Below are positions 1 through 40,497 of a DNA stretch of 64,000 nt, one piece after another (the first letter of the stretch is position 1; each line of letters opens with the position of its first letter). A program made the translations under genes and the position numbers. The notes below the pieces were generated by a model. It was not told where the DNA came from and ran no database searches. It saw nothing but the letters and a program-made list of their open reading frames with translations. Location of the stretch: positions 248,001 through 312,000 of IMG/VR virus record IMGVR_UViG_3300021964_000012. One strand, 5' to 3'.

Positions 1-121
1 TGGTACCGTCAATATCAAAAATCCAAGTATGTCCTAGGTTTTTGCTTAGTTCAAACGGAAACACCTCTGCTACCTTACTAGTAGGATAGTTTGCTCTGTC
101 GTAATCAAAATCTTCTATCAT
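1..121 (-). CDS. HAD-family phosphatase, 5' part only (runs off the window edge)
   Basis: Not in the ORF track. Manual translation from ATG at 121 gives MIEDFDYDRANYPTSKVAEVFPFELSKNLGHTWIFDIDGT, ending in HAD motif I (DxDGT). ATGA overlap with the stop of the 506-aa gene. Confidence 0.75.
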   Translation of the reverse strand, partial: MIEDFDYDRANYPTSKVAEVFPFELSKNLGHTWIFDIDGT

Positions 122-1638
122 AATATTTTTTTTATTCCTCTATTAAGCCAAAAAAGTCCATTATAAAAACTGCCAATAATACTGTCAATATCATCTTTGG
201 CATATCCACTTAGTGAAAGCCATATCAGTCCATGTAGTAAATCTATACTAGGCATATCAGACATCAATTCTTCAAATACGTCTTGAGCAATTCTAGCAGT
301 ATCTGGTTCACCCATGAGTATTTCGCAAGTGTCATTGTCAATATGCAATTTGAATTTTCGCTGATTGAATGTATCATAGCCACCAACTGCACTGTAGTAT
401 ACTTTTGCAAAATCGTATAGTGGATCACCGTATATTCCAGGTTTATAAAAACTTCCGCGAGGATCAATAAACCATGCTTTGAGATTCTTATCAATTATGG
501 TATTGCTAAATGTAGGGTCACCATGTATAGGTGTGAATGTATCTGTTTGAAGAGCTGCATCAATTTTATCCCACCATGTATTGTAGCGAGGATGAAATAA
601 GTTGTAACATTTTACACCGTTGACTGTGAAACTTTCTCGGTCAAAATTTGGAATAATCTGTTGAACACTCTTTACTCTGTTTTGTGTTTTTGATATATAC
701 ACGTTTGTAATTGCTTGCTCATTTGCAACTCGCTCACTTCTACTGTGTAAATCATCTAGAGTATAAATGATATCACTTAAAATACTGCGTTGTTCTCTCG
801 GTGTCAGGTCGTCCAGTTCCCAAATGTGTTTGCCATTGATACGTTGCATGGTAAAAGGATCTGTGCTAACTACGTCGGGTATGCGAATAAATCCAAGGTC
901 CTGTGCATCTTTGTACCAAATAATTTCATGTTCAATTAAATGTTTATAGTTTGGATCAATTGCTTGTTTCACTACTGTTTTGTCGAGTATATCAACTTGA
1001 TTGAAAAATCTGCTAAGTCCAATTCGACTGTTGTTTTCTTCTATACTGGCGAAATCACCAAGTTCTTCAAGTTCAGTTGCAACCACTGTGTCGTATTCAA
1101 GAATATTCTTACTAAACCATTTCACAAATTCACCACTTGCTGGAGGAATGGTAAACTGTCTGCGTTGAAAAAAGTAGAATATTCCTGGAACTCCAGTTAC
1201 TTCACTAGTGATTTCTTGTAAACCAGTTTCTTGGTAACTCCACCTACAGGTAAAAGCATCTGTAAGATACACAAGAGGTCGATCCGCATGGTCTGGAAAC
1301 GCAGGAAGTTCTTTGATAATAAGATCACTCCACGTAAGAAGTACAGGATCATCTTCAGGTACAAGTTTAAGTGCAATATCAATGCCACTACAAGTTCCTT
1401 TTTGATCTGTTTTAATCAGTTTATACTCGACTTGTGGAGTGTCAACTTGCAAGTAGTTTTCCAATTGGTCATATAGGTAGTCACCAATAATAATAAACCT
1501 TGCAGACGGAAATTTATCAAACAGATGATATAACAACGGTTTACCATGCACACTGACCAAGCACTTGGGTTTGTTCCATGTATGATGTCTTAATCGGCTG
1601 CCTCTGCCGCCAGCTTGTACTATTACTGTTAGTGTCAT
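118..1638 (-). CDS. Nucleotidyltransferase (GlmU/LicC-like) fused to an APH/choline-kinase-like domain
   Basis: N-terminal VIVQAGGRGSRL...KPKCL NTP-transferase signature; C-terminal HGDPTFSN (Brenner motif) and WFIDPRG...GDPLYDFAK kinase motifs. Confidence 0.8.
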   Translation of the reverse strand: MTLTVIVQAGGRGSRLRHHTWNKPKCLVSVHGKPLLYHLFDKFPSARFIIIGDYLYDQLENYLQVDTPQVEYKLIKTDQKGTCSGIDIALKLVPEDDPVLLTWSDLIIKELPAFPDHADRPLVYLTDAFTCRWSYQETGLQEITSEVTGVPGIFYFFQRRQFTIPPASGEFVKWFSKNILEYDTVVATELEELGDFASIEENNSRIGLSRFFNQVDILDKTVVKQAIDPNYKHLIEHEIIWYKDAQDLGFIRIPDVVSTDPFTMQRINGKHIWELDDLTPREQRSILSDIIYTLDDLHSRSERVANEQAITNVYISKTQNRVKSVQQIIPNFDRESFTVNGVKCYNLFHPRYNTWWDKIDAALQTDTFTPIHGDPTFSNTIIDKNLKAWFIDPRGSFYKPGIYGDPLYDFAKVYYSAVGGYDTFNQRKFKLHIDNDTCEILMGEPDTARIAQDVFEELMSDMPSIDLLHGLIWLSLSGYAKDDIDSIIGSFYNGLFWLNRGIKKIL

Positions 1639-2372
1639 AGTTGAACAATTCTATCTGGTAATGGTATATCCCATAGCTTTCTTTTACGCCAGTAGTATAA
1701 GCCATTTGGCATAGCAGGATAATTGTTATACACGTGTTGAAAACTAAGATCACTAAACACAAAACTCTCCAGTTTCCATTTGCGTCTTGCTCTCATACAG
1801 TGAAACACACTGTCAATATTACGTGCAAAAAGATATTGTTCCATTTCATCTGATGTAACTTCTACAAGTTCACGCCAGTTAAGATTGGCTCTAAATAATG
1901 CTACTCCAAAGGTCCATGCATCACATGGTTTGCTATCACCTTTACGTACTTGAGTGCTATAAAAATCTAAACTAAAACCATCTAGATTGTTCTCAACCAA
2001 GTACTGCTCTGCACGGTGTAATTTTTCATTGACAATCTCAAAGTTGTGTGTTAGAAACAGAGTATCATCAGCATCGATCATCCAAAACAAATCTGCATCT
2101 TTGCTCTGCTCAAATCCAGTTAAATTTGCAGTTGCCATGTTGCGTTTTGAACTTTTAAGTTGTTGCACATAAGTTACTAAACTTCTGTCGCTTTCAATTA
2201 GCTCAGCAGCTGGATAATCATAAGCAAAACAATTGTGTAGTTTTTCTGAGAGTGCTTTGTTGTCGCATAAAACAAAAGTTTTGTAGTTTTTAAATGTTTC
2301 CAACCAGAATCTTAAACACAAAAGTGTATGAGGAACATCTCTATCAATTTTTAAAAAAACATTTGTTTTCAT
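1635..2372 (-). CDS. Putative GT-A-fold glycosyltransferase-like protein
   Basis: Hydrophobic strand followed by DxD (FWMIDADD); coupled to neighbours in a sugar-modification-like operon. Confidence 0.45.
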   Translation of the reverse strand: MKTNVFLKIDRDVPHTLLCLRFWLETFKNYKTFVLCDNKALSEKLHNCFAYDYPAAELIESDRSLVTYVQQLKSSKRNMATANLTGFEQSKDADLFWMIDADDTLFLTHNFEIVNEKLHRAEQYLVENNLDGFSLDFYSTQVRKGDSKPCDAWTFGVALFRANLNWRELVEVTSDEMEQYLFARNIDSVFHCMRARRKWKLESFVFSDLSFQHVYNNYPAMPNGLYYWRKRKLWDIPLPDRIVQL

Positions 2373-2725
2373 TAGGATTTAGATCCAATGGTCCTTCTTT
2401 GTATATCATCATGATTAAACTCGGCCCAGTATAATTCAAATGCAACACCATCTTCTATACCTTCGAACTGATGTATCTTGCCTGGCTTAACTTGTGTAAA
2501 ATCTCCAGGACCTAGTATTGTTTCATCAACCAACCCTTGTTGTTCACCATCTTGCCATACTCTTACAATCATTTTTCCAGACTCAACAAAAAAACCATTC
2601 CATTTAAATCTGTGTTCATGCTCACTGCATTTAAAACCTGCTTTGTATTCAATGCGATGAAACTCTAATACTCCGTTTGCGTGTATCAATTCTGTAGAAC
2701 CCCATATTTTGCCTGCTTTCATCAA
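2372..2725 (-). CDS. Cupin-domain protein (mannose-6-phosphate isomerase-like fold)
   Basis: CSEHEHRFKWNGFFVESG and PGDFTQVKPGKIHQF cupin motifs. Confidence 0.75.
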   Translation of the reverse strand: MMKAGKIWGSTELIHANGVLEFHRIEYKAGFKCSEHEHRFKWNGFFVESGKMIVRVWQDGEQQGLVDETILGPGDFTQVKPGKIHQFEGIEDGVAFELYWAEFNHDDIQRRTIGSKS

Positions 2726-3483
2726 TGATTCTCCATTATTGTAAGATTTTTATCTATCCATGGTAGTACTAAATCTCTTTGTCGTAGATGACCAAATTTG
2801 GTAATACTTTGAACTACACATTCAGGAAGTAATTGTGTATCTTCTGCAATGCTATATAAGTTTGTTTTGTCTGGATCCATTGGTTCAATATTGCTTCGAT
2901 ACACGAGTATGTGTATCCAAGGATCGTTGATTTCCTTTCTGAAAAATCCAGATCTACAATCCCAACCGTTTACACTCAACATATAGATCAACATAGGCAA
3001 TGTAAAATTATATTTGTGATCCATTCTGGCATGGAACTCTTGCTTGTTGTATTCTATATTGGTTGTTTGCGGTACTGATAAAACCAACATCGAATCTGTA
3101 GTTGCAATGTGCCACCAATTTTTTAATGTCATGTATGGATTGGTTTGATACTGTAGTACATCATATGCCCATAAAATATCAAAATTTTTTTTTGGTCGTG
3201 TGATAGAGTTCACATTTTCTCTTTGAAAAGCAATATTATTGTGCTTGACGTTTAGTTTGTCGAGGTCATTTACAATTGTACACTTGATATTAAGTGGCAA
3301 CTTTTGCTTATCTCTAGTGACTGCGTTTGCCCACCATTGTATATCCAGTGCTTCTGGATCACTTCCAATGCCAACAACAGTTCCAACACTTTCCATGAAG
3401 TCGTCGTATTCATATAGATATTTGATAATATTTTCATAGCAGTGATTAAATTTTTCTTCGGAACTTGAAAAACTACTGTTCAT
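2722..3483 (-). CDS. Class I SAM-dependent methyltransferase-like protein
   Basis: VVGIGS (degenerate motif I), FDILWAYDVLQY..NPY..L..W...LVLSVP pattern typical of type-11 methyltransferases. Confidence 0.55.
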   Translation of the reverse strand: MNSSFSSSEEKFNHCYENIIKYLYEYDDFMESVGTVVGIGSDPEALDIQWWANAVTRDKQKLPLNIKCTIVNDLDKLNVKHNNIAFQRENVNSITRPKKNFDILWAYDVLQYQTNPYMTLKNWWHIATTDSMLVLSVPQTTNIEYNKQEFHARMDHKYNFTLPMLIYMLSVNGWDCRSGFFRKEINDPWIHILVYRSNIEPMDPDKTNLYSIAEDTQLLPECVVQSITKFGHLRQRDLVLPWIDKNLTIMENH

Positions 3484-3485
3484 TG

Positions 3486-3944
3486 TTATACCTGTACATC
3501 TTCCATTCCGGCAGTTCTAAGACGTACAATATGCCCTAGTTGCCATTGTTTAGTATCTAAGCCTTTCATTATGCCAAGATACTTATTACGCAGTAGAGCA
3601 ACCTCGTTAATTAATGTTTCGAAGTCAATTACTTCGTCTTCGCCATCAACGTATTTTTCTGCATCACGACTGGTAAGTGCTCTTGCATATCCTTCCAAAT
3701 ATTTTTGAAAGTGTTTGCGTCTTATCTGCCTAAGTTTAATGTTTAGAAAGTTTAGTACTGCTTCAATTTCTTGCAGTTGATTGAACCGATGTTCAGTGAG
3801 TCCTGGCAATGCTTTAATATTTTTTTCAACAAGTCCGCCTACTCTACATTCACTCTTGGCTATTTCCAACTCATGCTCATAATAAGTGAGAAACCCAGGA
3901 ATCTCTGAAAGGTTGTTTACAATTTTATTATAATATTGGCTCAC
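3486..3944 (-). CDS. uvsY: UvsY-like recombination mediator
   Basis: Helical 152-aa protein with LTSRDAEKYVDGE and C-terminal KGLDTKQWQLGHIVRLR; near uvsX. Confidence 0.75.
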   Translation of the reverse strand: MSQYYNKIVNNLSEIPGFLTYYEHELEIAKSECRVGGLVEKNIKALPGLTEHRFNQLQEIEAVLNFLNIKLRQIRRKHFQKYLEGYARALTSRDAEKYVDGEDEVIDFETLINEVALLRNKYLGIMKGLDTKQWQLGHIVRLRTAGMEDVQV

Positions 3945-4480
3945 TTAGTGGCATCCATTAACCATTGATTATAAAGTATTGTAGCACAATCATCTAACTG
4001 TGTCAACTCCTTTAACTTTTCTAAAACATTTCCTTCAACTATATCAGCCAATTCAATAATTTTATACGCAGATGGTTTGATCATGTTACTAAAATCCATT
4101 ATTAGTTGAGCATATTCTTCAATGGTTTTTGCGCCACATGCTTTACTCATTCTCTCCCAAACTGTATCACTGTGTAGTTTGCGAAACCTTGTTGCTGCCC
4201 ACATTGAAGTTTTCAAATCACTGCACACAATACCTAAATAAGAATGCTTATTTTGTATGTGGTAATCAGCGTCATGACTAGGCAAACTAAGCCAATACCT
4301 GCTTGCATTAGCAATATAAGCATCTTTTTCTGCATCATTGTCAAATACAAAACTACGTTTTAGTTTTGCTCTTTCCTTAAGGATAACACATCTGTTTGAT
4401 TTTATACTAACACCTTTTGAATCAATCAGTCCGGTAACAATGTCTCCACAACATCCTCCCATGTACAGTACAATGTCCAT
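3941..4480 (-). CDS. Hypothetical protein
   Basis: 179-aa ORF coupled to both neighbours; N-terminal strand plus YMGGCCGD loop, family not recognised. Confidence 0.6.
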   Translation of the reverse strand: MDIVLYMGGCCGDIVTGLIDSKGVSIKSNRCVILKERAKLKRSFVFDNDAEKDAYIANASRYWLSLPSHDADYHIQNKHSYLGIVCSDLKTSMWAATRFRKLHSDTVWERMSKACGAKTIEEYAQLIMDFSNMIKPSAYKIIELADIVEGNVLEKLKELTQLDDCATILYNQWLMDATK

Positions 4481-5187
4481 TAAAATTTCTTTTCGAACAT
4501 AAATTTTATGTTTCCATTGGTTGTGTCTGGATTTTCTAATATATCATATGAACCGTCGGGTTGTTTGTTTTTTTCTACAAATTGAATATCATGCCATAAT
4601 AAATCTAAACCAATTTTTTTACAAGCAAATCCAAAGTCATAAAAATAATCATAGTGATTAACACTTAGTCTATTCCAACAAGGTATTTGTGTATCTCTAA
4701 AGCTATAGAAAAATTTACAGCCTGGTTTCATTGCTCGTTTGTATTCAATAAAGTAAGACTGTAAACAAGGTATGTCTAAATCGTTTGGATACAAAGTTGC
4801 CCATAAGTCTGATCTATTGTTCATCACAACAAAATTGTTAAATTTGTCAGGATAAAGGTTACCAATATCACTTCTATCATTTACAATAACAGCATTAGGA
4901 TAAAATGTTTTTACCACTGGATGTGTTTCTATTACAGTTAGGTCTGATACAATGTCTTCAACATAATAGCCTGCACTTCCAAAATAACATGTAGGTCCAG
5001 GTTGCAGGTTTTCAATTATGTGTTTGTCATACTCGTCGATATAAACTTTTGTTGAACTTTTACGACTTTTAAGCCAAAATTCATGCTTCAATCGACCGAT
5101 TCGGTAACGTATATAATTGTGTTTGTTACTTAATGTGTTATCAGTATGGGCCATTTCATAATCAGAAAAATTTTCAATCAACTTCAT
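4480..5187 (-). CDS. Hypothetical protein, possibly a degenerate methyltransferase fold
   Basis: 235 aa; CYFGSAG and AMKPGCKFFYSF resemble class I methyltransferase motifs I and III. Confidence 0.5.
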   Translation of the reverse strand: MKLIENFSDYEMAHTDNTLSNKHNYIRYRIGRLKHEFWLKSRKSSTKVYIDEYDKHIIENLQPGPTCYFGSAGYYVEDIVSDLTVIETHPVVKTFYPNAVIVNDRSDIGNLYPDKFNNFVVMNNRSDLWATLYPNDLDIPCLQSYFIEYKRAMKPGCKFFYSFRDTQIPCWNRLSVNHYDYFYDFGFACKKIGLDLLWHDIQFVEKNKQPDGSYDILENPDTTNGNIKFMFEKKF

Positions 5188-5708
5188 TTAATCTTCCTAA
5201 TGTAAAAATGTCGGTCTGGACAACTCCAGGTAAAGTGTTTACCAAGATCTATATAATCTCGACTCATATCAACTATTACACAATTTTGTAACTCATGTTG
5301 TAACCAATATGTAATTGCTTGTTGAAAATCTTCAGGTACATTATAATGTAGTCTTTGATTGTTGATGTTTAAATAATGCCTGTTTAAACAAAAATATAGA
5401 TGGCTGCAATTATTCAGCCAATTTTGTATTTGTTCAATGATACCTGTTAAAGGGTATCTTCCATATCCTTGATGAGTAACTAATATCAAATCACTGTCAG
5501 TGATATTATCAACTGTTGGAATATCTAAATCAAGTAAAACTTCTTCTATATGATATACTCTACAAAAACCATTAAGTTTTACAAAATCTTCTATTTGTTG
5601 TAATCGACGCAATTTGTATTTGCCATCATAAAATCTATCTTGAATTCGTTTAAAATTTTTAGCCCATTTATAAAGATTATTAGAATTTACTATCTCAATA
5701 TTCTTCAT
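5184..5708 (-). CDS. Hypothetical protein
   Basis: 174-aa AT-rich ORF, ATGA-type overlap with the next gene. Confidence 0.6.
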   Translation of the reverse strand: MKNIEIVNSNNLYKWAKNFKRIQDRFYDGKYKLRRLQQIEDFVKLNGFCRVYHIEEVLLDLDIPTVDNITDSDLILVTHQGYGRYPLTGIIEQIQNWLNNCSHLYFCLNRHYLNINNQRLHYNVPEDFQQAITYWLQHELQNCVIVDMSRDYIDLGKHFTWSCPDRHFYIRKIK

Positions 5709-6028: not shown

Positions 6029-7468
6029 TTATAATATACTAGTTAGCTCTTTATACGTCTGTTTGAAATCTTGTTGTCTTATTTTATCAGTGACAGTCAA
6101 AAAGTTAATCATATCTGTAGTATCTATTGGCATACTTGAACTATTCATTAATGCTATAATTGGTTCTATTATCTTTTGAAATTCATTATCCTGAATGTTC
6201 AATAATTTATCAGTTATATATTGCTTTTGCGTTTTGTTAAACAATAAAATGTTTAGACGTTTAGGATAATGCAACACGTTAAACAATACTGGTAGTCCTT
6301 GGTCTCTACAGAACTTAAATAATGTGTATGTGTCGAGTATATTAAGTGTTGTTATTGTACTCCATACATTCAAATTTAGAACTGTGTCTGTTGATTTTTT
6401 ATATTTTTCAATTGTATCTACTATTGTTTTCCAACTCACTCCATATCTTTCATACTCAAACTTTTTCCCTGTGTTATCTATGCTAAAACTTAACTCAACT
6501 TCTTTGAAATGACTCCATAACGGCATTAAATTTGATGCAAATGTTGTAGCATTGGTATTGTAATGTAGCGATATATAACTGCTTCTTTGTTTGTTTACAA
6601 AGTATTGTAGCAGGGTAGAGTGTGTCTTGTCAAGTAAAGGTTCGCCTCCTGAAAAATTTAGGTGCAATAAATCACTAGTAATGTGTTCAAGATCTTTCCA
6701 AATTTTTGAACCGTTGACATCAGTCCATTCATTCTTCAGCAGTTCTACCGATGAAAACTGCGGATAGGATTCTTTATGTTGAGAGACTTCATTTGCCCAT
6801 TTACTACTAAGGGCAGGTCCACACATTCGACATTTTAGATTGCATGTTTTGTTAATTTTAATATCTAAACCAATTAGGTTACGACTTTTTGTATTGTTGT
6901 AGTCTATATCAAAAATTTTATCTCTGTAAACAAATGCATCATTCTGTCTCTGACTTTTAGCACCGTGTTCTTCATTTTTCCAACAACTTGCACAAGCTGT
7001 TGGTTTCTTGCCTTCTAAGAACTGTTGTCTCAAATCAGTAAAATCTATATCCTTAACCGATACTGTTTTAACATTTGGATAGTTATCTTCTTTATACCTA
7101 CAACAAGGAGCTAAATTACCTTCATTTCTAATTTCTAGCATTATCCATGGATTTACACAGATGGTTTCTGGAATATCAAAATTTGTAGGATTTACAACAG
7201 TTTCATTGCCTTCATATTCAATATGCACAAAACATTCATCAATATCAAGATGATTTAAGATACGGTTAAGATAGTTATAAAACGGCTTTGTGTTGATGGC
7301 AGGGACCGAATCCACAAACACTATGCGTTGGTTAGGTTCGTAGTATTCTCTCTTGTATTTTACAAGTTCGCGGTACAGTTGATTTATGGGTTGTTCTAGA
7401 AAATATTTTACTTTTTCTATATATAAAACGTCAAACTGAGATAAATTGTCATTCTGTTGGTTGCTCAT
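6029..7468 (-). CDS. Radical SAM protein with N-terminal SPASM/Twitch-like Fe-S region
   Basis: CNLKCRMC (CxxxCxxC) and FSGGEPLL; upstream CVNPW...GNLAPCC...CASCW. Confidence 0.85.
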   Translation of the reverse strand: MSNQQNDNLSQFDVLYIEKVKYFLEQPINQLYRELVKYKREYYEPNQRIVFVDSVPAINTKPFYNYLNRILNHLDIDECFVHIEYEGNETVVNPTNFDIPETICVNPWIMLEIRNEGNLAPCCRYKEDNYPNVKTVSVKDIDFTDLRQQFLEGKKPTACASCWKNEEHGAKSQRQNDAFVYRDKIFDIDYNNTKSRNLIGLDIKINKTCNLKCRMCGPALSSKWANEVSQHKESYPQFSSVELLKNEWTDVNGSKIWKDLEHITSDLLHLNFSGGEPLLDKTHSTLLQYFVNKQRSSYISLHYNTNATTFASNLMPLWSHFKEVELSFSIDNTGKKFEYERYGVSWKTIVDTIEKYKKSTDTVLNLNVWSTITTLNILDTYTLFKFCRDQGLPVLFNVLHYPKRLNILLFNKTQKQYITDKLLNIQDNEFQKIIEPIIALMNSSSMPIDTTDMINFLTVTDKIRQQDFKQTYKELTSIL

Positions 7469-37759: not shown

Positions 37760-40497
37760 TATAATCTTCCTACTAGAACTTCTATCACACCTGGACCATC
37801 ATTGTCTTTGTTTTCAATTGCTTTACCGATTACACTACCAGTTGGTGGATTATGAATATCTTTGTATGCTTGTGCATGTCCAGGTTCGTCACTGCTGATC
37901 AACATATCGCCTTTGCGTACGGTTCCAACAACCTTGCATGGTACTCGTCCAATAAGTGCTACACTGATACCATCTAAATCATTGTTCATCAAGTAGGCAG
38001 GATCAGTTGAAACTACACCTGCAATTGCAGTGCTTCTAGACCTACGAGTTTGTGTTACTTCGTATTCGCCTCCAAGTTCAACAACAGTTCCAGGCTCATA
38101 ATCTTGATCACTGGTATATTTTTCTGCCAGGTCAGCATACCTTGCTTGTGTGGCGGTTGCAGTTATCACGCCAGCACTAAAATTGCCCGAACTATCTCTA
38201 GCAACAATGGTGCTAGCTGTATTAGCACTAGTGGCATTACTGGTAATGGTAACACTACCACTAGCACCACCACCTGAAAGTCCTGTTCCACTTACCGCAA
38301 CGTTGGTAATATCACCTACATTAGTGGTATAACCAGCACCATTAGTTAGCTGATTGTTGTTTGTTGGTATATCACTGGTAAGTGCAATAGTACCAGTAGA
38401 GGTTGGTAGTGTTAGTGTTCCGGTATTACTGATTGTGCTAATAACTGGACTGGTAAGTGTTTTATTTGTAAGTGTTTGTGAACCAGTTAGCGTTGCAACT
38501 GTACTGTCAATTGACAAGGTATGTGCAACACCTTCACCTGTGGTTGCTCCACTTGATGATATACCAGTACCGCCAGTAATTGTTCCAACATAGTTGCCTG
38601 TTGTATCTGTACCTAGTGCAACTGAGTTTGCAGCAATAGTAGTTGTAATGCTCGCAGTATCACCTGCACTAGTAAAGGTAGCACTACCAGTAACATCACC
38701 GCTTAGTTGTACGGTCACTGCACTGCTTAATCCACCAGCAGTGCCTGTGGTGTTTTGATTGAGTGTTGCTACACGTGCCGCCGCTACAGTGCCTGTTGAA
38801 ATATTTGATCCATTTAAGGCTGTTAAACTTGCACCACTACCACTAAATGCCGCTGATGTTAACAAACCAGTGCTTGGATTGTACGTTAATCCACTGTCTT
38901 GTTTTACCGCAGTTAAATCACCAGTTGTGGTACTTGCAAAATATAATAAGAAATTGGTATTTGTACTGGTATCTGAACTTACTGTTGCACCGCCTCCGCT
39001 TGCATCAGCAAAACTAAGAGTTCCTGCACCATCAGTAACAAGAACTTGATCAGCAGTACCGTCTGAGGTTGGAAACTTATAGGCATTGTTAAATGTGATA
39101 GCACCACTGTCGTTGCCGTCAATCTTAAACTGTCCGTTATTGCCTGCAGGATCTGCACCTGTGCCATCAGTATCAACAGCAACCGAAAACTGTGTTCTAG
39201 CAGCATTATTTGTATTATCAAAAGCAAACGATCCACCTGTAACCAGTGATGTACCATTGTAATATTCGTGGTTACTTCTAAATAGATAATCACCCGAGTT
39301 GACTGCAAGTGGTGATGCTACTGTGCCTCTGTATCTTCTTGTTCTTATATCTGGAGCGTCAGCACTGTTGTTGTACTGTTCCATACGAATCTGTGCTGTT
39401 TGAGCATCCTCACCTGTCATGTGTAGTGTTACTTCAGGAGATGTTTGATTGATACCAACATAATTACTTGCTGTATCAATGGTTAAAATATCGGTTCCTT
39501 CGATACTTGTATTGTCTGATCCTACAATGAGAATTTCGTTGGCAGTACCAAGTGTAAGCCCAGTAACACCATCCAGCAGGTTAAGTTCAGTGGCTGTTGC
39601 TGTAACTGCCGTACCGCCGATGTAAAGATTCCCAGCATCAACACGCAAATCGTTTGTGACTGTAACATCTTGATTGGTTGCGTCAACAGTAATAGCGGTA
39701 CCATTTTGACCATTAGCAGCAATTTTCAAATCATTTGTAGAAAAAATACGGAAGTTGTCACTGCCATCATTATCAAATGCACCTACATTTGTCATACGCA
39801 AACCAGTGCCACTTTGATCAATTCTTAGTTCGTCAACGCCAGATATGTTACCGCTGGTAAATGATACTGTACCGTCTGTCATAGTACCAAATGTACCAAT
39901 CCCAGCAGTGGTTATGTTGCCGCCTGTGACGTTCCCTGTAGCAGTTACACTCGTAAGTGATGGAGTTAAACTTGGTGTAATTGTAAGTGTGTCTGTTGAT
40001 GCGTTGGTTGTTAGGGCAAGATTTGTACCAGCTACAATAGTAATTGTATCGCCTATAGCATCAGCAACAATACTATCTTCACCGCTTACTGCAACTGTGC
40101 CATAGGCTGCATTACCATTGCGAACAAAAGTCAGTGCAGTTGTGCCAATTGTGATTGGATCATCTGTGGTTAGTTTCCATTGAGTATCAGCATAGGTAGT
40201 ACCTTCGGTGATCATAATGATCATCCCTGCACTAACTTCTCCAGTGGTATCAGCATCCAATGATCGTGCCCAAGTTCCGTTTGATCCTGCACCAACTGTG
40301 GTTACATAGTATATTCCGTTTTCGCTTCCTGTGGATTGACCTGTGACTAGTATTCTATCACGCAGTGCAAGACTTACACCATCTACTGTAGCAGGTGCAC
40401 CTCCACTCAATGTAATGTTTGAAGTGGTTACTGCTCTAGCGGTTTGCTTGTAGTCTATGTCTTGAAGCTGGTGAGCTCTAGGCCGAGTTAATCCCAT
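37759..40497 (-). CDS. Tail fibre/appendage protein with C-terminal intramolecular chaperone (Peptidase G2-like)
   Basis: N-terminal DGV...DRILV.GQ..ENGIY..W.R module; Thr/Gly-rich; C-terminal YADLAEKY...GVVSTDPAYLMN...GRVPCKV...GKAIE. Confidence 0.8.
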   Translation of the reverse strand: MGLTRPRAHQLQDIDYKQTARAVTTSNITLSGGAPATVDGVSLALRDRILVTGQSTGSENGIYYVTTVGAGSNGTWARSLDADTTGEVSAGMIIMITEGTTYADTQWKLTTDDPITIGTTALTFVRNGNAAYGTVAVSGEDSIVADAIGDTITIVAGTNLALTTNASTDTLTITPSLTPSLTSVTATGNVTGGNITTAGIGTFGTMTDGTVSFTSGNISGVDELRIDQSGTGLRMTNVGAFDNDGSDNFRIFSTNDLKIAANGQNGTAITVDATNQDVTVTNDLRVDAGNLYIGGTAVTATATELNLLDGVTGLTLGTANEILIVGSDNTSIEGTDILTIDTASNYVGINQTSPEVTLHMTGEDAQTAQIRMEQYNNSADAPDIRTRRYRGTVASPLAVNSGDYLFRSNHEYYNGTSLVTGGSFAFDNTNNAARTQFSVAVDTDGTGADPAGNNGQFKIDGNDSGAITFNNAYKFPTSDGTADQVLVTDGAGTLSFADASGGGATVSSDTSTNTNFLLYFASTTTGDLTAVKQDSGLTYNPSTGLLTSAAFSGSGASLTALNGSNISTGTVAAARVATLNQNTTGTAGGLSSAVTVQLSGDVTGSATFTSAGDTASITTTIAANSVALGTDTTGNYVGTITGGTGISSSGATTGEGVAHTLSIDSTVATLTGSQTLTNKTLTSPVISTISNTGTLTLPTSTGTIALTSDIPTNNNQLTNGAGYTTNVGDITNVAVSGTGLSGGGASGSVTITSNATSANTASTIVARDSSGNFSAGVITATATQARYADLAEKYTSDQDYEPGTVVELGGEYEVTQTRRSRSTAIAGVVSTDPAYLMNNDLDGISVALIGRVPCKVVGTVRKGDMLISSDEPGHAQAYKDIHNPPTGSVIGKAIENKDNDGPGVIEVLVGRL

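What the first reader, a model, noticed from the sequence alone, without database searches (positions are those of the whole stretch)
1..3483. Kinase-nucleotidyltransferase fusion, HAD phosphatase, DxD protein, cupin and methyltransferase: a phage precursor-activation pathway
Seen: five translationally coupled genes, including a HAD gene missed by the ORF track at the window edge. Established: kinase plus HAD phosphatase plus nucleotidyltransferase is the logic of NDP-heptose synthesis (HddA/GmhB/HddC), and an APH-type kinase plus NTP transferase is that of LicA/LicC CDP-choline synthesis; such sets occur in capsule loci. Inference: the phage makes an activated sugar or polyol-phosphate for virion, DNA or host-surface modification, possibly supplying the transferases near the fibres. 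The substrate cannot be read from the sequence.
Basis: partly seen in the sequence, partly recalled or inferred. Interest (0 to 1): 0.65.

Follow-up and report, generated by a model that had tools for sequence, protein, structure and literature searches.

The report
Phage sugar-activation module in glycan island
A 328-kb estuarine jumbo phage carries a bacterial-type three-step pathway that probably makes activated arabinose, but it sits in a large, variable sugar-building gene island and apparently does not serve DNA modification as it does in coliphage RB69.

Summary
Five abutting or overlapping minus-strand genes lie at 2-3483, and the HAD gene cut by the window edge is a complete 134-codon gene in the 328,292-bp phage genome.

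The nucleotidyltransferase-kinase fusion and the HAD phosphatase are homologues of AfhE and AfhF. In RB69-like phages these make UDP-D-arabinofuranose: arabinose-5-P to arabinose-1,5-bisP to arabinose-1-P to the NDP-sugar.

The "DxD protein" is a GT-A glycosyltransferase that travels with this pair.

All five genes form the right end of an ~11.4-kb, 15-gene island. The island also holds:
- a GT8 transferase;
- three Kdo-transferase-like proteins;
- a second nucleotidyltransferase fused to a PMI-type cupin;
- an FkbM methyltransferase.

The complete genome has no ThyA-family base hydroxylase, no arabinose-5-P isomerase and no TET/JBP enzyme. None of the island proteins has a predicted membrane segment. 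The acceptor is therefore probably not DNA but a protein or other soluble target.

Eighty bacterial loci carry the same fusion, and 65 have the HAD beside it. Thirty-two have an arabinose-5-P isomerase nearby, and in one it is fused to the enzyme, so the pentose substrate is the best guess.

Verdict: a new variant of a recently described kind, of moderate to high interest.

The parts
2..121 (-). First 40 codons of the AfhF-like HAD sugar-bisphosphate phosphatase. The full gene is 134 codons at G000 247717-248121 (L002:13717-14121).
   Evidence: DxDGT motif (D36, D38, G39, T40) plus T75 and R77 are invariant in alignment A3. Pfam HAD_PNKP 1e-4 and PHROG 1238/505. phmmer against the S-SRM01 HAD gives 6e-29. 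A homologue lies next to the fusion gene in 65 of 80 bacterial loci.
118..1638 (-). AfhE-like bifunctional enzyme: an N-terminal sugar-1-phosphate nucleotidyltransferase and a C-terminal APH-type anomeric sugar kinase.
   Evidence: Pfam NTP_transf_3 3e-8 and APH 5e-6. phrog_4098 2.6e-60 over the full length. Full-length tblastn matches to RB69 ORF052c-type genes in 375 phage records, with S-SRM01 best at 37%. Invariant G10-G-R-G-S-R-L16, K23-P-K25, H372-G-D374...N379 and D392. Bacterial homologues reach 33-57% identity.
1635..2372 (-). GT-A fold glycosyltransferase with a DxD motif (D100-A-D102-D103). It is the likely user of the NDP-sugar.
   Evidence: AF2 pLDDT 91.6. Top structural matches are mannosylglycerate synthase (Z 15.2, rmsd 3.1, 185 aligned) and the LARGE1 GT8 domain (Z 13.9) (Foldseek). 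D100, D102 and T104 are invariant in 27 sequences. Present in 48 ORFs of the 50 viral loci. A homologue sits directly after the HAD gene in 5 bacterial loci.
2372..2725 (-). Small metal-site cupin. It is a variable accessory and possibly an aldose-ketose sugar-phosphate isomerase.
   Evidence: Pfam Cupin_2 2e-7; phrog_7851 2.8e-12. It aligns end to end with the PMI-type cupin domain of the neighbouring 264-aa protein (hhalign E 8e-4, 106 columns). Present in about half of the related loci, and unusually conserved where present.
2722..3483 (-). Class I SAM-dependent methyltransferase-like protein, a variable accessory.
   Evidence: Weak Pfam Methyltransf_11/31/23 hits (E 0.015-0.07). Homologues at 45-53% identity carry Methyltransf_11/12/23/25/31. 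Absent from many related loci.
160..188 (-). Perfect sigma-70 consensus (TTGACA, 17 nt, TATAAT) inside the 3' end of the fusion gene, 39 nt upstream of the HAD start. It may be an internal early promoter.
   Evidence: The only 12-of-12 match in the 12.5-kb scan. The overall count of promoter-like sites was no higher than in shuffles. Function was not tested.

Best explanation
The five genes are the right-hand end of an ~11.4-kb, 15-gene glycan island (G000 about 240,071-251,483). The island lies between a helicase gene and uvsY in a complete 328-kb estuarine jumbo myovirus.

The conserved core is the HAD phosphatase, the nucleotidyltransferase-kinase fusion and a GT-A glycosyltransferase. By homology to AfhE/AfhF the pathway would run as follows:
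1. The kinase domain phosphorylates C1 of a sugar that already carries a terminal phosphate.
2. The HAD enzyme removes the terminal phosphate.
3. The N-terminal domain joins the sugar-1-phosphate to an NTP.

The most likely substrate is D-arabinose-5-phosphate taken from the host's Kdo pathway, which would give NDP-D-arabinofuranose. The adjacent GT-A enzyme would transfer that sugar.

The rest of the island would build and decorate a glycan with soluble enzymes. It contains a cupin, two methyltransferases, a GT8 fused to a Kdo-transferase-like domain, two further Kdo-transferase-like proteins, another glycosyltransferase, and an RfaE-domain-II-type nucleotidyltransferase fused to a PMI-type cupin.

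The acceptor is most probably a phage (virion) protein or another cytoplasmic target, not DNA.

Shown here: the gene set, the homologies, the folds, the co-conservation, and the absence of base-hydroxylating enzymes. Inferred: the sugar's identity, the nucleotide used and the acceptor.
For: **Homology to AfhE/AfhF**
- Full-length matches to RB69 ORF052c-type proteins and to PHROG 4098.
- Biochemistry of AfhE/AfhF as summarised in PMC13326640, section 27.
- Catalytic motifs of both domains are intact.

**HAD partner**
- Present beside the fusion in the viral relatives.
- Present in 65 of 80 bacterial loci.

**Arabinose-5-P link**
- An API-type SIS gene lies directly upstream in viral contig L038, whose enzyme is 56% identical to ours. 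The same is true in cyanophage S-SRM01 and in RB69-like phages.
- 32 of 80 bacterial loci hold one.
- Schwartzia encodes an NTase-kinase-SIS triple fusion whose SIS part matches solved arabinose-5-P isomerases.

**GT-A assignment and linkage**.

**Evidence against DNA as acceptor**
- No PF00303, PF01380, PF13580 or PF12851 anywhere in the complete genome.
- S-SRM01 and the relatives' large contigs also lack a ThyA family member.

**Glycan-island character**
- GT8, FkbM, PHROG glycosyltransferase and RfaE-II+PMI.
- Three paralogous domains fold like the WbbB/KpsC/KrkA Kdo transferases, Z 13.0-14.4 against 10.9 for the next fold.
- Relatives swap in sulfotransferase, acetyltransferase, other methyltransferases, GT2 and a 2OG oxygenase.
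- No hydrophobic segment typical of membrane proteins in any island protein.

**Expression hint**: contigs from RNA libraries of three runs lie on all five genes.
Against: - Identity to the biochemically studied AfhE type is only about 27%, and no activity was measured here.
- The phage and its whole clade lack an arabinose-5-P isomerase. They carry PMI-type cupins instead, which would fit mannose or heptose as well.
- The bacterial partner protein looks GT9-like, the heptosyltransferase family, by language-model and structure look-alikes only.
- API adjacency does not follow cell-envelope type cleanly: Negativicutes, which make LPS, have it in 5 of 6 loci.
- The island lies among replication and recombination genes (uvsY, uvsX, gp32, helicase), where DNA-modification genes of T4-like phages often sit.
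- The protein acceptor is inferred only from negative evidence.
- RNA-library contigs cannot exclude carried-over DNA.
Confidence: 0.55

Rival explanations
1. Same three-step chemistry but a different sugar. A PMI-type cupin (the free 117-aa protein and/or the C-terminal domain of the 264-aa protein) would isomerise fructose-6-P or sedoheptulose-7-P to mannose-6-P or D-glycero-D-manno-heptose-7-P. The kinase, HAD and nucleotidyltransferase would then make NDP-mannose or NDP-heptose.
For: - Almost every jumbo-clade locus with enough flank has one or both cupins and none has a SIS isomerase.
- The 264-aa protein combines RfaE domain II (heptose-1-P adenylyltransferase, 5e-21) with the PMI domain of GMP-PMI (7e-17).
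- The best PDB sequence hits of the nucleotidyltransferase domain include HddC-type 6-deoxy-manno-heptose pathway proteins.
- The HAD hits GmhB-like PHROGs.
- The bacterial partner is GT9-like.
Against: - Isomerases adjacent or fused to this enzyme family elsewhere are all of the arabinose-5-P type, not GmhA (SIS_2) or PMI.
- No cupin lies near the bacterial homologues.
- L023 and L041 have neither a cupin nor a SIS gene.
- The similarity between the two cupins is weak (hhalign probability 24%).
Confidence: 0.2
2. The activated sugar and the island's transferases remodel a host envelope glycan (LPS core, O-antigen or capsule) during infection, for example to block superinfection, rather than glycosylating phage proteins.
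For: - Kdo-transferase-like folds (KpsC and WbbB act on capsule and O-antigen lipid-linked acceptors at the cytoplasmic face).
- GT8 and GT25 families are typical LPS-core enzymes.
- The variable decorating enzymes resemble O-antigen locus diversity.
Against: - The phage shows a T4-like lytic gene set.
- The island has no flippase, polymerase, polyprenyl-phosphate transferase or any protein with a membrane-type hydrophobic segment.
- No direct evidence exists for either kind of acceptor.
Confidence: 0.15
3. The module serves DNA hypermodification as in RB69, DLP3 and HY126, that is, arabinosylation of a hydroxylated cytosine.
For: Homology to AfhE/AfhF. The island lies among replication and recombination genes. 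One GT1/GT4-type GT-B gene lies about 8 kb from the DNA polymerase gene.
Against: - The complete genome has no thymidylate-synthase-family protein, so it cannot make 5hoC, 5hmC or 5hmU by that route. It also has no TET/JBP.
- tblastn with the phiR1-RT 5hodCMP synthase, arabinosyltransferase, nucleotide kinase and isomerase finds nothing.
- The enzyme clusters with proteobacterial homologues, far from the RB69 type.
- Relatives' islands hold sulfo-, acetyl- and methyltransferases, which fit a surface glycan better than DNA.
Confidence: 0.07
4. LicA/LicC-type synthesis of CDP-choline or another phospho-alcohol.
For: The APH-type kinase plus a LicC-like nucleotidyltransferase domain (1jyk at E 0.002).
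Against: That route needs no phosphatase, yet the HAD is the most constant partner. Sugar-phosphate isomerases are adjacent or fused in relatives. The neighbouring genes are glycosyltransferases.
Confidence: 0.03

Closest known systems
AfhE/AfhF UDP-D-arabinofuranose pathway of arabinosyl-5-hydroxycytosine phages (HY126; RB69 gp52:53 and gp51; DLP3 gp82 and gp81)
   Same: The same two-protein architecture: an NTP_transferase-APH kinase fusion followed by a small HAD phosphatase. Homology runs over the full length, and the kinase, phosphatase, nucleotidyltransferase logic is the same.
   Different: Only about 27% identity. The genome has no arabinose-5-P isomerase, no ThyA-type 5hodCMP synthase and no homologue of the DNA arabinosyltransferases. 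The genes are embedded in a GT-A, GT8 and Kdo-transferase-like glycan island instead of a nucleotide-metabolism cluster.
Cyanophage S-SRM01 cluster (SIS protein, 'NDP-sugar synthase', '3' phosphatase' amid GDP-fucose and fucosyltransferase genes)
   Same: The closest isolate homologue (37% identity), with the HAD directly downstream and FkbM methyltransferase and many glycosyltransferases around it. That genome also has no ThyA-family gene.
   Different: S-SRM01 keeps the arabinose-5-P isomerase and has no cupin, no o312-type GT-A and no Kdo-transferase-like genes in the stretch examined. Its paper does not discuss the cluster.
Bacterial AfhE-like, HAD and about-310-aa GT9-like gene trios (Betaproteobacteria, Alphaproteobacteria, Akkermansia, Clostridia, Negativicutes)
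   Same: 33-57% identity, closer than any isolated phage. The HAD is adjacent in 65 of 80 loci, and o312-type GT-A genes follow the HAD in 5 loci.
   Different: The usual third partner is a GT9-like protein that is absent from the phage. The bacterial loci are small modules, one of them inside a flagellar gene cluster, not 11-kb islands. Their function is uncharacterised as far as I could find.
NDP-heptose pathways (GmhA, HldE or HddA, GmhB, HddC)
   Same: The identical reaction logic: isomerase, anomeric kinase, terminal-phosphate HAD phosphatase, nucleotidyltransferase. The nucleotidyltransferase domain shows weak HddC similarity.
   Different: The kinase is APH-type, not GHMP or ribokinase-type. 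There is no GmhA (SIS_2) gene.
Retaining beta-Kdo transferases WbbB (GT99), KpsC (GT107) and KrkA
   Same: The fold of the 347-aa protein, and by profile comparison of the 291-aa protein and the C-terminal half of the GT8 protein. The His-Pro motif is invariant.
   Different: No Pfam Capsule_synth hit. The QxxxD nucleophile motif is present only in some paralogues of relatives, not in this phage's copies. The donor is unknown, and the phage encodes no KdsA or KdsB.
Virus-encoded glycosylation of virions: chlorovirus and mimivirus glycan machinery, mycobacteriophage capsid and tail O-glycosylation (from my own knowledge, not tested here)
   Same: Soluble virus-encoded sugar-nucleotide enzymes, several glycosyltransferases and methyltransferases in one genome.
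   Different: No virion data exist for this uncultured phage, so the analogy is only a working model.

Membership tests
AfhE/AfhF NDP-arabinofuranose synthesis module | A single polypeptide with an N-terminal sugar-1-P nucleotidyltransferase and a C-terminal APH-type kinase, homologous over the full length | tested here: met
   Pfam domains. phrog_4098 5-504 of 506, E 2.6e-60. 365 phage records cover at least 80% of the query. Catalytic motifs are invariant.
AfhE/AfhF NDP-arabinofuranose synthesis module | A small HAD phosphatase encoded next to the fusion gene | tested here: met
   The 134-aa HAD overlaps the fusion's stop by 4 nt. It is conserved in the relatives and in 65 of 80 bacterial loci.
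AfhE/AfhF NDP-arabinofuranose synthesis module | A phage-encoded arabinose-5-phosphate isomerase (SIS) that supplies the substrate | tested here: not met
   No PF01380 or PF13580 match in the complete genome, and none in 49 of 50 related viral loci. The host enzyme could substitute.
AfhE/AfhF NDP-arabinofuranose synthesis module | Arabinose-5-P 1-kinase and UDP-arabinose pyrophosphorylase activities | not testable with these tools
   Needs enzyme assays. The only support here is comparative: API adjacency and fusion.
Arabinosyl-5-hydroxycytosine DNA hypermodification system | A ThyA-homologue 5hodCMP synthase (Asn at the E. coli ThyA D169 position) | tested here: not met
   No PF00303 match in the complete genome. 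tblastn with the phiR1-RT homologue is negative.
Arabinosyl-5-hydroxycytosine DNA hypermodification system | GT-B DNA arabinosyltransferases syntenic with the sugar genes | tested here: not met
   tblastn with phiR1-RT ORF047 is negative. The island's transferases are GT-A, GT8 and Kdo-transferase-like. The single GT1-type gene lies about 150 kb away.
NDP-heptose pathway (GmhA/HldE or HddA/GmhB/HddC) | A GmhA-type sedoheptulose-7-P isomerase and a GHMP or ribokinase-type heptose kinase | tested here: not met
   No SIS_2 or SIS match. The kinase is APH-type. An RfaE-domain-II-like nucleotidyltransferase is present in the island, so a heptose product is not excluded.
LicA/LicC CDP-choline pathway | A choline kinase plus a cytidylyltransferase acting without a phosphatase step, in a phosphocholine-decoration context | tested here: inconclusive
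   The domain types are compatible. The obligatory HAD partner, the sugar isomerase fusions and the glycosyltransferase neighbours argue against it.
GT-A glycosyltransferases (245-aa DxD protein) | A GT-A Rossmann-like fold with a DxD metal/nucleotide-sugar motif after the fourth strand | tested here: met
   AF2 pLDDT 91.6 with strand 95-100 followed by D100-A-D102-D103. Z 15.2 to mannosylglycerate synthase and 13.9 to LARGE1. Nucleotidyltransferases of the same fold score 12-13, so the fold alone does not separate the two. The DxD motif and the lack of a GxGxR motif favour a transferase.
GT99/GT107 retaining beta-Kdo transferases (347-aa protein and its paralogues) | The two-domain fold, the HP motif and a QxxxD catalytic nucleophile | tested here: inconclusive
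   Fold met (Z 13.0-14.4 for the top 15 entries). H225-P226 and Q189 are invariant. The Asp four residues after the Gln is missing in this phage's copies.

The most novel reading that the evidence does not exclude
The Afh-type sugar-activation module is at root a widespread bacterial glycan module, not a DNA-modification device. In this estuarine jumbo-phage clade it would feed a self-encoded, hypervariable glycan containing arabinofuranose, perhaps Kdo-like sugars and O-methyl sugars, placed on virion proteins by soluble enzymes. That would be a bacteriophage counterpart of giant-virus capsid glycosylation. In addition, a PMI-type cupin may have displaced the usual SIS-type arabinose-5-P isomerase.
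Probability: 0.22. Interest if true: 0.78.

Novelty: new variant of a known kind. Interest (0 to 1): 0.6.

Why it matters
AfhE/AfhF were described only in 2025-2026, as the sugar-supply arm of arabinosyl-5-hydroxycytosine DNA hypermodification.

This locus shows the same module in a phage that cannot make the modified base, wired instead to a large set of glycosyltransferases and decorating enzymes. Closer homologues are common in bacteria. This has three consequences:
- It changes how the pathway's origin should be read: the bacterial glycan module came first, and the DNA use is an offshoot.
- It warns against predicting arabinosylated DNA from these two genes alone.
- It points to self-encoded glycosylation in abundant estuarine jumbo phages, which could affect adsorption, stability or recognition.

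The claim is directly testable with recombinant enzymes.

Tried and rejected
- **Megablast against phage isolates.** The first 6 kb found nothing. tblastn of the DxD protein also found nothing. The clade is known only from metagenomes.
- **tblastn with phiR1-RT cluster proteins.** Isomerase, HAD, ORF050, 5hodCMP synthase, arabinosyltransferase and nucleotide kinase were run against the genome. Only the fusion and the DNA polymerase matched.
- **Weak Pfam hit of the DxD protein to HAD subfamily IIIB** (E 0.018). Rejected, because the model is a GT-A fold.
- **Promoter and terminator scan, and the T4 late-promoter word TATAAATA.** Counts were no higher than chance, so no timing could be inferred.
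- **Kdo supply.** No KdsA or KdsB in the genome, so if Kdo is used it would be host CMP-Kdo.
- **My HAD family HMM hit the GT8 protein**. This is an artefact of the HAD-GT8 fusion proteins of L023 and L030 in the seed alignment.
- **The 200-aa ORFs between fusion and HAD in L027, L042 and L038.** They are unrelated to each other: a 2OG oxygenase, a methyltransferase and an unknown.
- **Tree building.** The careful maximum-likelihood tree did not finish, so a quick IQ-TREE tree and a FastTree tree were used. Deep branches are therefore not firm.
- **Literature.** The Nat Chem Biol paper on HY126 AfhE/AfhF is not held. Its results are cited second-hand from PMC13326640.

**Limits and compliance**
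- Only two structure predictions were allowed. The cupin, the methyltransferase and the fusion itself were not folded.
- The large representative protein search and complex prediction were not used.
- No alternative genetic code was used.

Full report
**1. Observation**

The stretch 1-3483 holds five minus-strand ORFs that overlap or abut:
- 2-121: the first 40 codons of a protein with the HAD motif DIDGT;
- 118-1638: 506 aa;
- 1635-2372: 245 aa;
- 2372-2725: 117 aa;
- 2722-3483: 253 aa.

The next gene upstream in the direction of transcription, at 3486-3944, is a UvsY-like recombination mediator (phrog_231, 3.8e-15).

The window is bases 248,001-312,000 of a 328,292-bp viral record with direct terminal repeats, rated complete. 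I fetched the sequence to the left of the window (L002). There the HAD gene is a complete 134-codon ORF.

**2. What the five genes are**

*The 506-aa protein.* It has an N-terminal sugar-1-phosphate nucleotidyltransferase domain (NTP_transf_3/NTP_transferase, residues 5-110) and a C-terminal APH-type kinase domain (221-416). Across ten diverse relatives the following are invariant:
- the nucleotidyltransferase signature G10-G-R-G-S-R-L16 and K23-P-K25;
- the kinase motifs H372-G-D374...N379 and D392.

It matches PHROG 4098 end to end (2.6e-60). By tblastn it matches the RB69 ORF052c-type gene in 375 phage records, 365 of them covering at least 80% of the query. Identity to Mosigvirus, Tegunavirus, Acinetobacter, Serratia and Klebsiella T4-like phages is 23-29%. 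The best hit is cyanophage S-SRM01 at 37%.

A 2026 paper (PMC13326640, section 27) describes this protein family. [quoted passage not shown] The neighbouring HAD protein AfhF (RB69 gp51) removes the 5-phosphate of arabinose-1,5-bisphosphate. Together with a phage arabinose-5-P isomerase they supply UDP-arabinofuranose for arabinosylation of 5-hydroxycytosine in DNA. In phiR1-RT the gene order is isomerase, fusion, HAD.

*The HAD protein.* It has the catalytic D36-x-D38-G-T, T75 and R77. It matches the S-SRM01 "3' phosphatase" at 6e-29.

*The 245-aa "DxD protein".* It has no Pfam or NCBIfam family, and its only homologues are metagenomic or viral. A model built from 27 sequences is confident (pLDDT 91.6) and has a GT-A fold. 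The best matches are mannosylglycerate synthase (Z 15.2, rmsd 3.1, 185 residues) and the GT8 domain of LARGE1 (Z 13.9). Nucleotidyltransferases of the same fold class score 12-13. The invariant D100-A-D102 follows the fourth strand, and there is no GxGxR motif. On that basis I read it as a glycosyltransferase.

*The 117-aa protein.* It is a metal-site cupin (Cupin_2, 2e-7).

*The 253-aa protein.* It gives only weak methyltransferase hits itself, but it belongs to a family whose members at 45-53% identity carry class I SAM methyltransferase domains.

**3. The genes belong to a larger island**

Downstream of the HAD gene, to the left of the window, the same strand continues with:
- a 75-codon ORF;
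- a 264-aa protein that joins an RfaE-domain-II-like HIGH-motif nucleotidyltransferase (TIGR02199, 5e-21) to the PMI cupin domain of GMP-PMI enzymes (TIGR01479 C-terminus, 7e-17);
- a 560-aa protein with an N-terminal GT8 domain;
- a 347-aa protein of unknown family.

Then come three plus-strand genes: a 276-aa unknown, a 109-aa protein and an FkbM methyltransferase. After them, back on the minus strand, come a 291-aa unknown, a PHROG-1962 glycosyltransferase and a 194-aa unknown. Two terminator-like hairpins follow.

Profile comparison shows that the 291-aa protein, the 347-aa protein and the C-terminal half of the GT8 protein are one family (hhalign E 4e-32 to 3e-17). A model of the 347-aa member (pLDDT 84.8) matches the retaining beta-Kdo transferases WbbB, KpsC and KrkA in its top 15 entries (Z 13.0-14.4). 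The next fold scores 10.9.

The His-Pro motif and a Gln are invariant in this family. The Asp nucleophile of the QxxxD motif is present only in some paralogues of related phages, so the donor sugar is open. The phage has no KdsA or KdsB.

No island protein has a hydrophobic 19-residue window above 1.6 on the Kyte-Doolittle scale. So there is no sign of a flippase, a polymerase or a polyprenyl-phosphate transferase.

The flanks are replication and recombination genes. On one side lie UvsY, a radical SAM/SPASM protein, UvsX and gp32. On the other lie a helicase and an AAA protein.

**4. Conservation**

Fifty related loci were found in IMG/VR, with 48-100% identity for the fusion protein. The co-occurrence table and the HMM searches show the following:
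- The HAD, the fusion and the GT-A gene are kept together in essentially every locus that reaches far enough.
- The GT8 protein, the Kdo-transferase-like proteins, the FkbM methyltransferase and the 276-aa protein are frequent.
- The free cupin and the 253-aa methyltransferase come and go.

Relatives carry other decorating enzymes in the same place: Methyltransf_24 and Methyltransf_23, FkbM, a sulfotransferase, a hexapeptide acyltransferase, a 2OG-Fe oxygenase and a GT2. The picture is a conserved activation-and-transfer core inside a hypervariable glycan island.

**5. DNA is an unlikely acceptor**

The complete genome has no thymidylate-synthase-family gene (PF00303), so it cannot make 5-hydroxy- or 5-hydroxymethyl-pyrimidines by the known route. 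It has no Tet_JBP match either (that control rang nowhere, so this absence carries less weight). It also has no SIS or SIS_2 isomerase.

tblastn with the other phiR1-RT cluster proteins is negative. S-SRM01, which is a complete genome, and the 300-kb and 199-kb contigs of relatives also lack a ThyA family member.

S-SRM01 keeps isomerase, fusion and HAD in the middle of GDP-fucose synthesis genes, fucosyltransferases, GT2, GT25 and FkbM. It is a second case of the module in a glycan rather than a DNA context.

**6. Which sugar?**

Evidence for arabinose-5-phosphate:
- Viral contig L038, whose enzyme is 56% identical to ours, has an isomerase directly upstream. That isomerase matches E. coli KdsD at 1e-47.
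- The S-SRM01 isomerase is of the same type.
- A scan of one genome per prokaryotic species returned 80 bacterial loci at 33-57% identity. The HAD is adjacent in 65, an API-type SIS gene lies within the locus in 32, and an o312-type GT-A follows the HAD in 5.
- In Schwartzia succinivorans the three activities are one 705-aa protein, NTase-kinase-SIS. Its SIS part matches solved arabinose-5-P isomerases.

Isomerase adjacency by group is as follows:

| Group | Loci with isomerase |
|---|---|
| Monoderm loci | 11 of 16 |
| Pseudomonadota/Campylobacterota | 10 of 37 |
| Verrucomicrobiota | 0 of 13 |
| Negativicutes | 5 of 6 |

This partly fits the idea that organisms with a housekeeping KdsD need no dedicated copy. 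The Negativicutes do not fit it.

Trees place the jumbo-phage enzymes next to proteobacterial ones, L038 among Betaproteobacteria, S-SRM01 in another bacterial group, and the RB69 type on a very long branch (both are quick methods). The simplest reading is that the phage enzyme does what the bacterial subfamily does, using host arabinose-5-P.

Evidence against a firm call:
- The jumbo clade consistently carries PMI-type cupins, which might make mannose-6-P or heptose-7-P. They might equally perform the stereochemically analogous ribulose-5-P to arabinose-5-P isomerisation.
- The usual bacterial third partner, an about-310-aa protein present in 47 of 80 loci, looks GT9-like.

I therefore give the pentose reading about even odds within a well-supported mechanism.

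**7. Acceptor**

Three observations point to cytoplasmic glycosylation of a soluble acceptor:
- all the island enzymes are soluble;
- the decorating enzymes vary between relatives;
- the genome holds more sugar genes elsewhere: an NDP-sugar epimerase/dehydratase and a GT1-type GT-B at 94-97 kb, a GT8-like and a GT25 gene at 112-114 kb, and a second FkbM-like gene at 39 kb.

Phage structural proteins are the obvious candidates. In Polynucleobacter the bacterial module lies inside a flagellar gene cluster (MotA, MotB, FlgH, FlgI, FlgJ), a typical site for flagellin glycosylation genes. This is a hint that the bacterial module also serves protein glycosylation. All of this section is inference.

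**8. Occurrence and expression**

Near-identical DNA is present in estuary, marine, seawater and sediment runs of more than ten studies from 2018 to 2025. Contigs from three metatranscriptome libraries, from two studies, lie on pieces of all five genes and of uvsY. This is compatible with transcription but does not exclude DNA carry-over.

**9. Comparison and verdict**

The pair works like AfhE/AfhF and is homologous to them. The system fails the membership tests for the arabinosyl-5-hydroxycytosine DNA system, because it has no base hydroxylase, no isomerase and no GT-B arabinosyltransferase.

It is best called a new variant of a known kind: an Afh-type sugar-activation module with a dedicated GT-A transferase, at the core of a jumbo-phage glycan island. 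The LicA/LicC reading is rejected. The NDP-heptose analogy is right as logic but not as family membership.

- No alternative genetic code was used.
- Read laying received 4,000 bases.
- The large representative protein search was not used.

Noticed in passing
window 160-188 (minus strand): A perfect sigma-70 consensus (TTGACA, 17 nt, TATAAT) lies inside the 3' end of the fusion gene, 39 nt before the HAD start codon. It could drive host-polymerase transcription of the HAD gene and the genes downstream of it.
   Followed up: no
L002:7435-8310(-), L002:10114-11157(-), L002:11063-12745(-) (left of the window): Three paralogous domains fold like the retaining beta-Kdo transferases WbbB, KpsC and KrkA. 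One of them is fused behind a GT8 domain. The HP motif is kept but the QxxxD nucleophile is not. The phage has no KdsA or KdsB.
   Followed up: partly
L002:12736-13530(-): An unusual fusion of an RfaE-domain-II-like (HIGH-motif) nucleotidyltransferase with the PMI cupin domain that is normally found behind an NTP_transferase domain in GMP-PMI enzymes.
   Followed up: partly
window 2372-2725: The small cupin is far better conserved than its neighbours: 89% identical in L026, L027 and L049, where the fusion is 59% identical. A DNA run shows a depth spike at 2413-2546. This suggests the gene is shared among many co-occurring phages or moves between them.
   Followed up: no
window 3941-5708: Three ORFs of 179, 235 and 174 aa lie between uvsY and the next conserved gene. 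They have no family hits and are found only in this phage's near-identical contigs and in L051, so they are a lineage-specific insertion.
   Followed up: no
window 6029-7468 (minus strand): A 479-aa radical SAM protein with a SPASM domain sits between uvsY and uvsX. Relatives have only 24-26% identical counterparts.
   Followed up: no
G000 94014-96771, 112145-113612, 39386-40228 (L137, L138): Further sugar genes lie elsewhere in the genome: an NDP-sugar epimerase/dehydratase next to a GT1-type GT-B, a GT8-like gene next to a GT25 gene, and a second FkbM-like gene.
   Followed up: partly
L128:7989-10106 (Schwartzia succinivorans); L059 (Polynucleobacter): In Schwartzia the nucleotidyltransferase, kinase and arabinose-5-P-isomerase-type SIS domain are one 705-aa protein. 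In Polynucleobacter the isomerase-fusion-HAD module lies inside a flagellar gene cluster. An about-310-aa GT9-like protein follows the HAD in 47 of 80 bacterial loci.
   Followed up: partly
L023:9482-10951, L030: In two related viral contigs the HAD phosphatase is fused to a GT8-like protein. This is another sign that sugar activation and transfer are coupled.
   Followed up: no
L038:4743-6128: The isomerase-bearing viral contig also encodes an NTP_transferase fused to a HAD_2 (beta-phosphoglucomutase-like) domain, plus DUF5672 and DUF6165 proteins. This is a second, different sugar-activation design in the same island.
   Followed up: no
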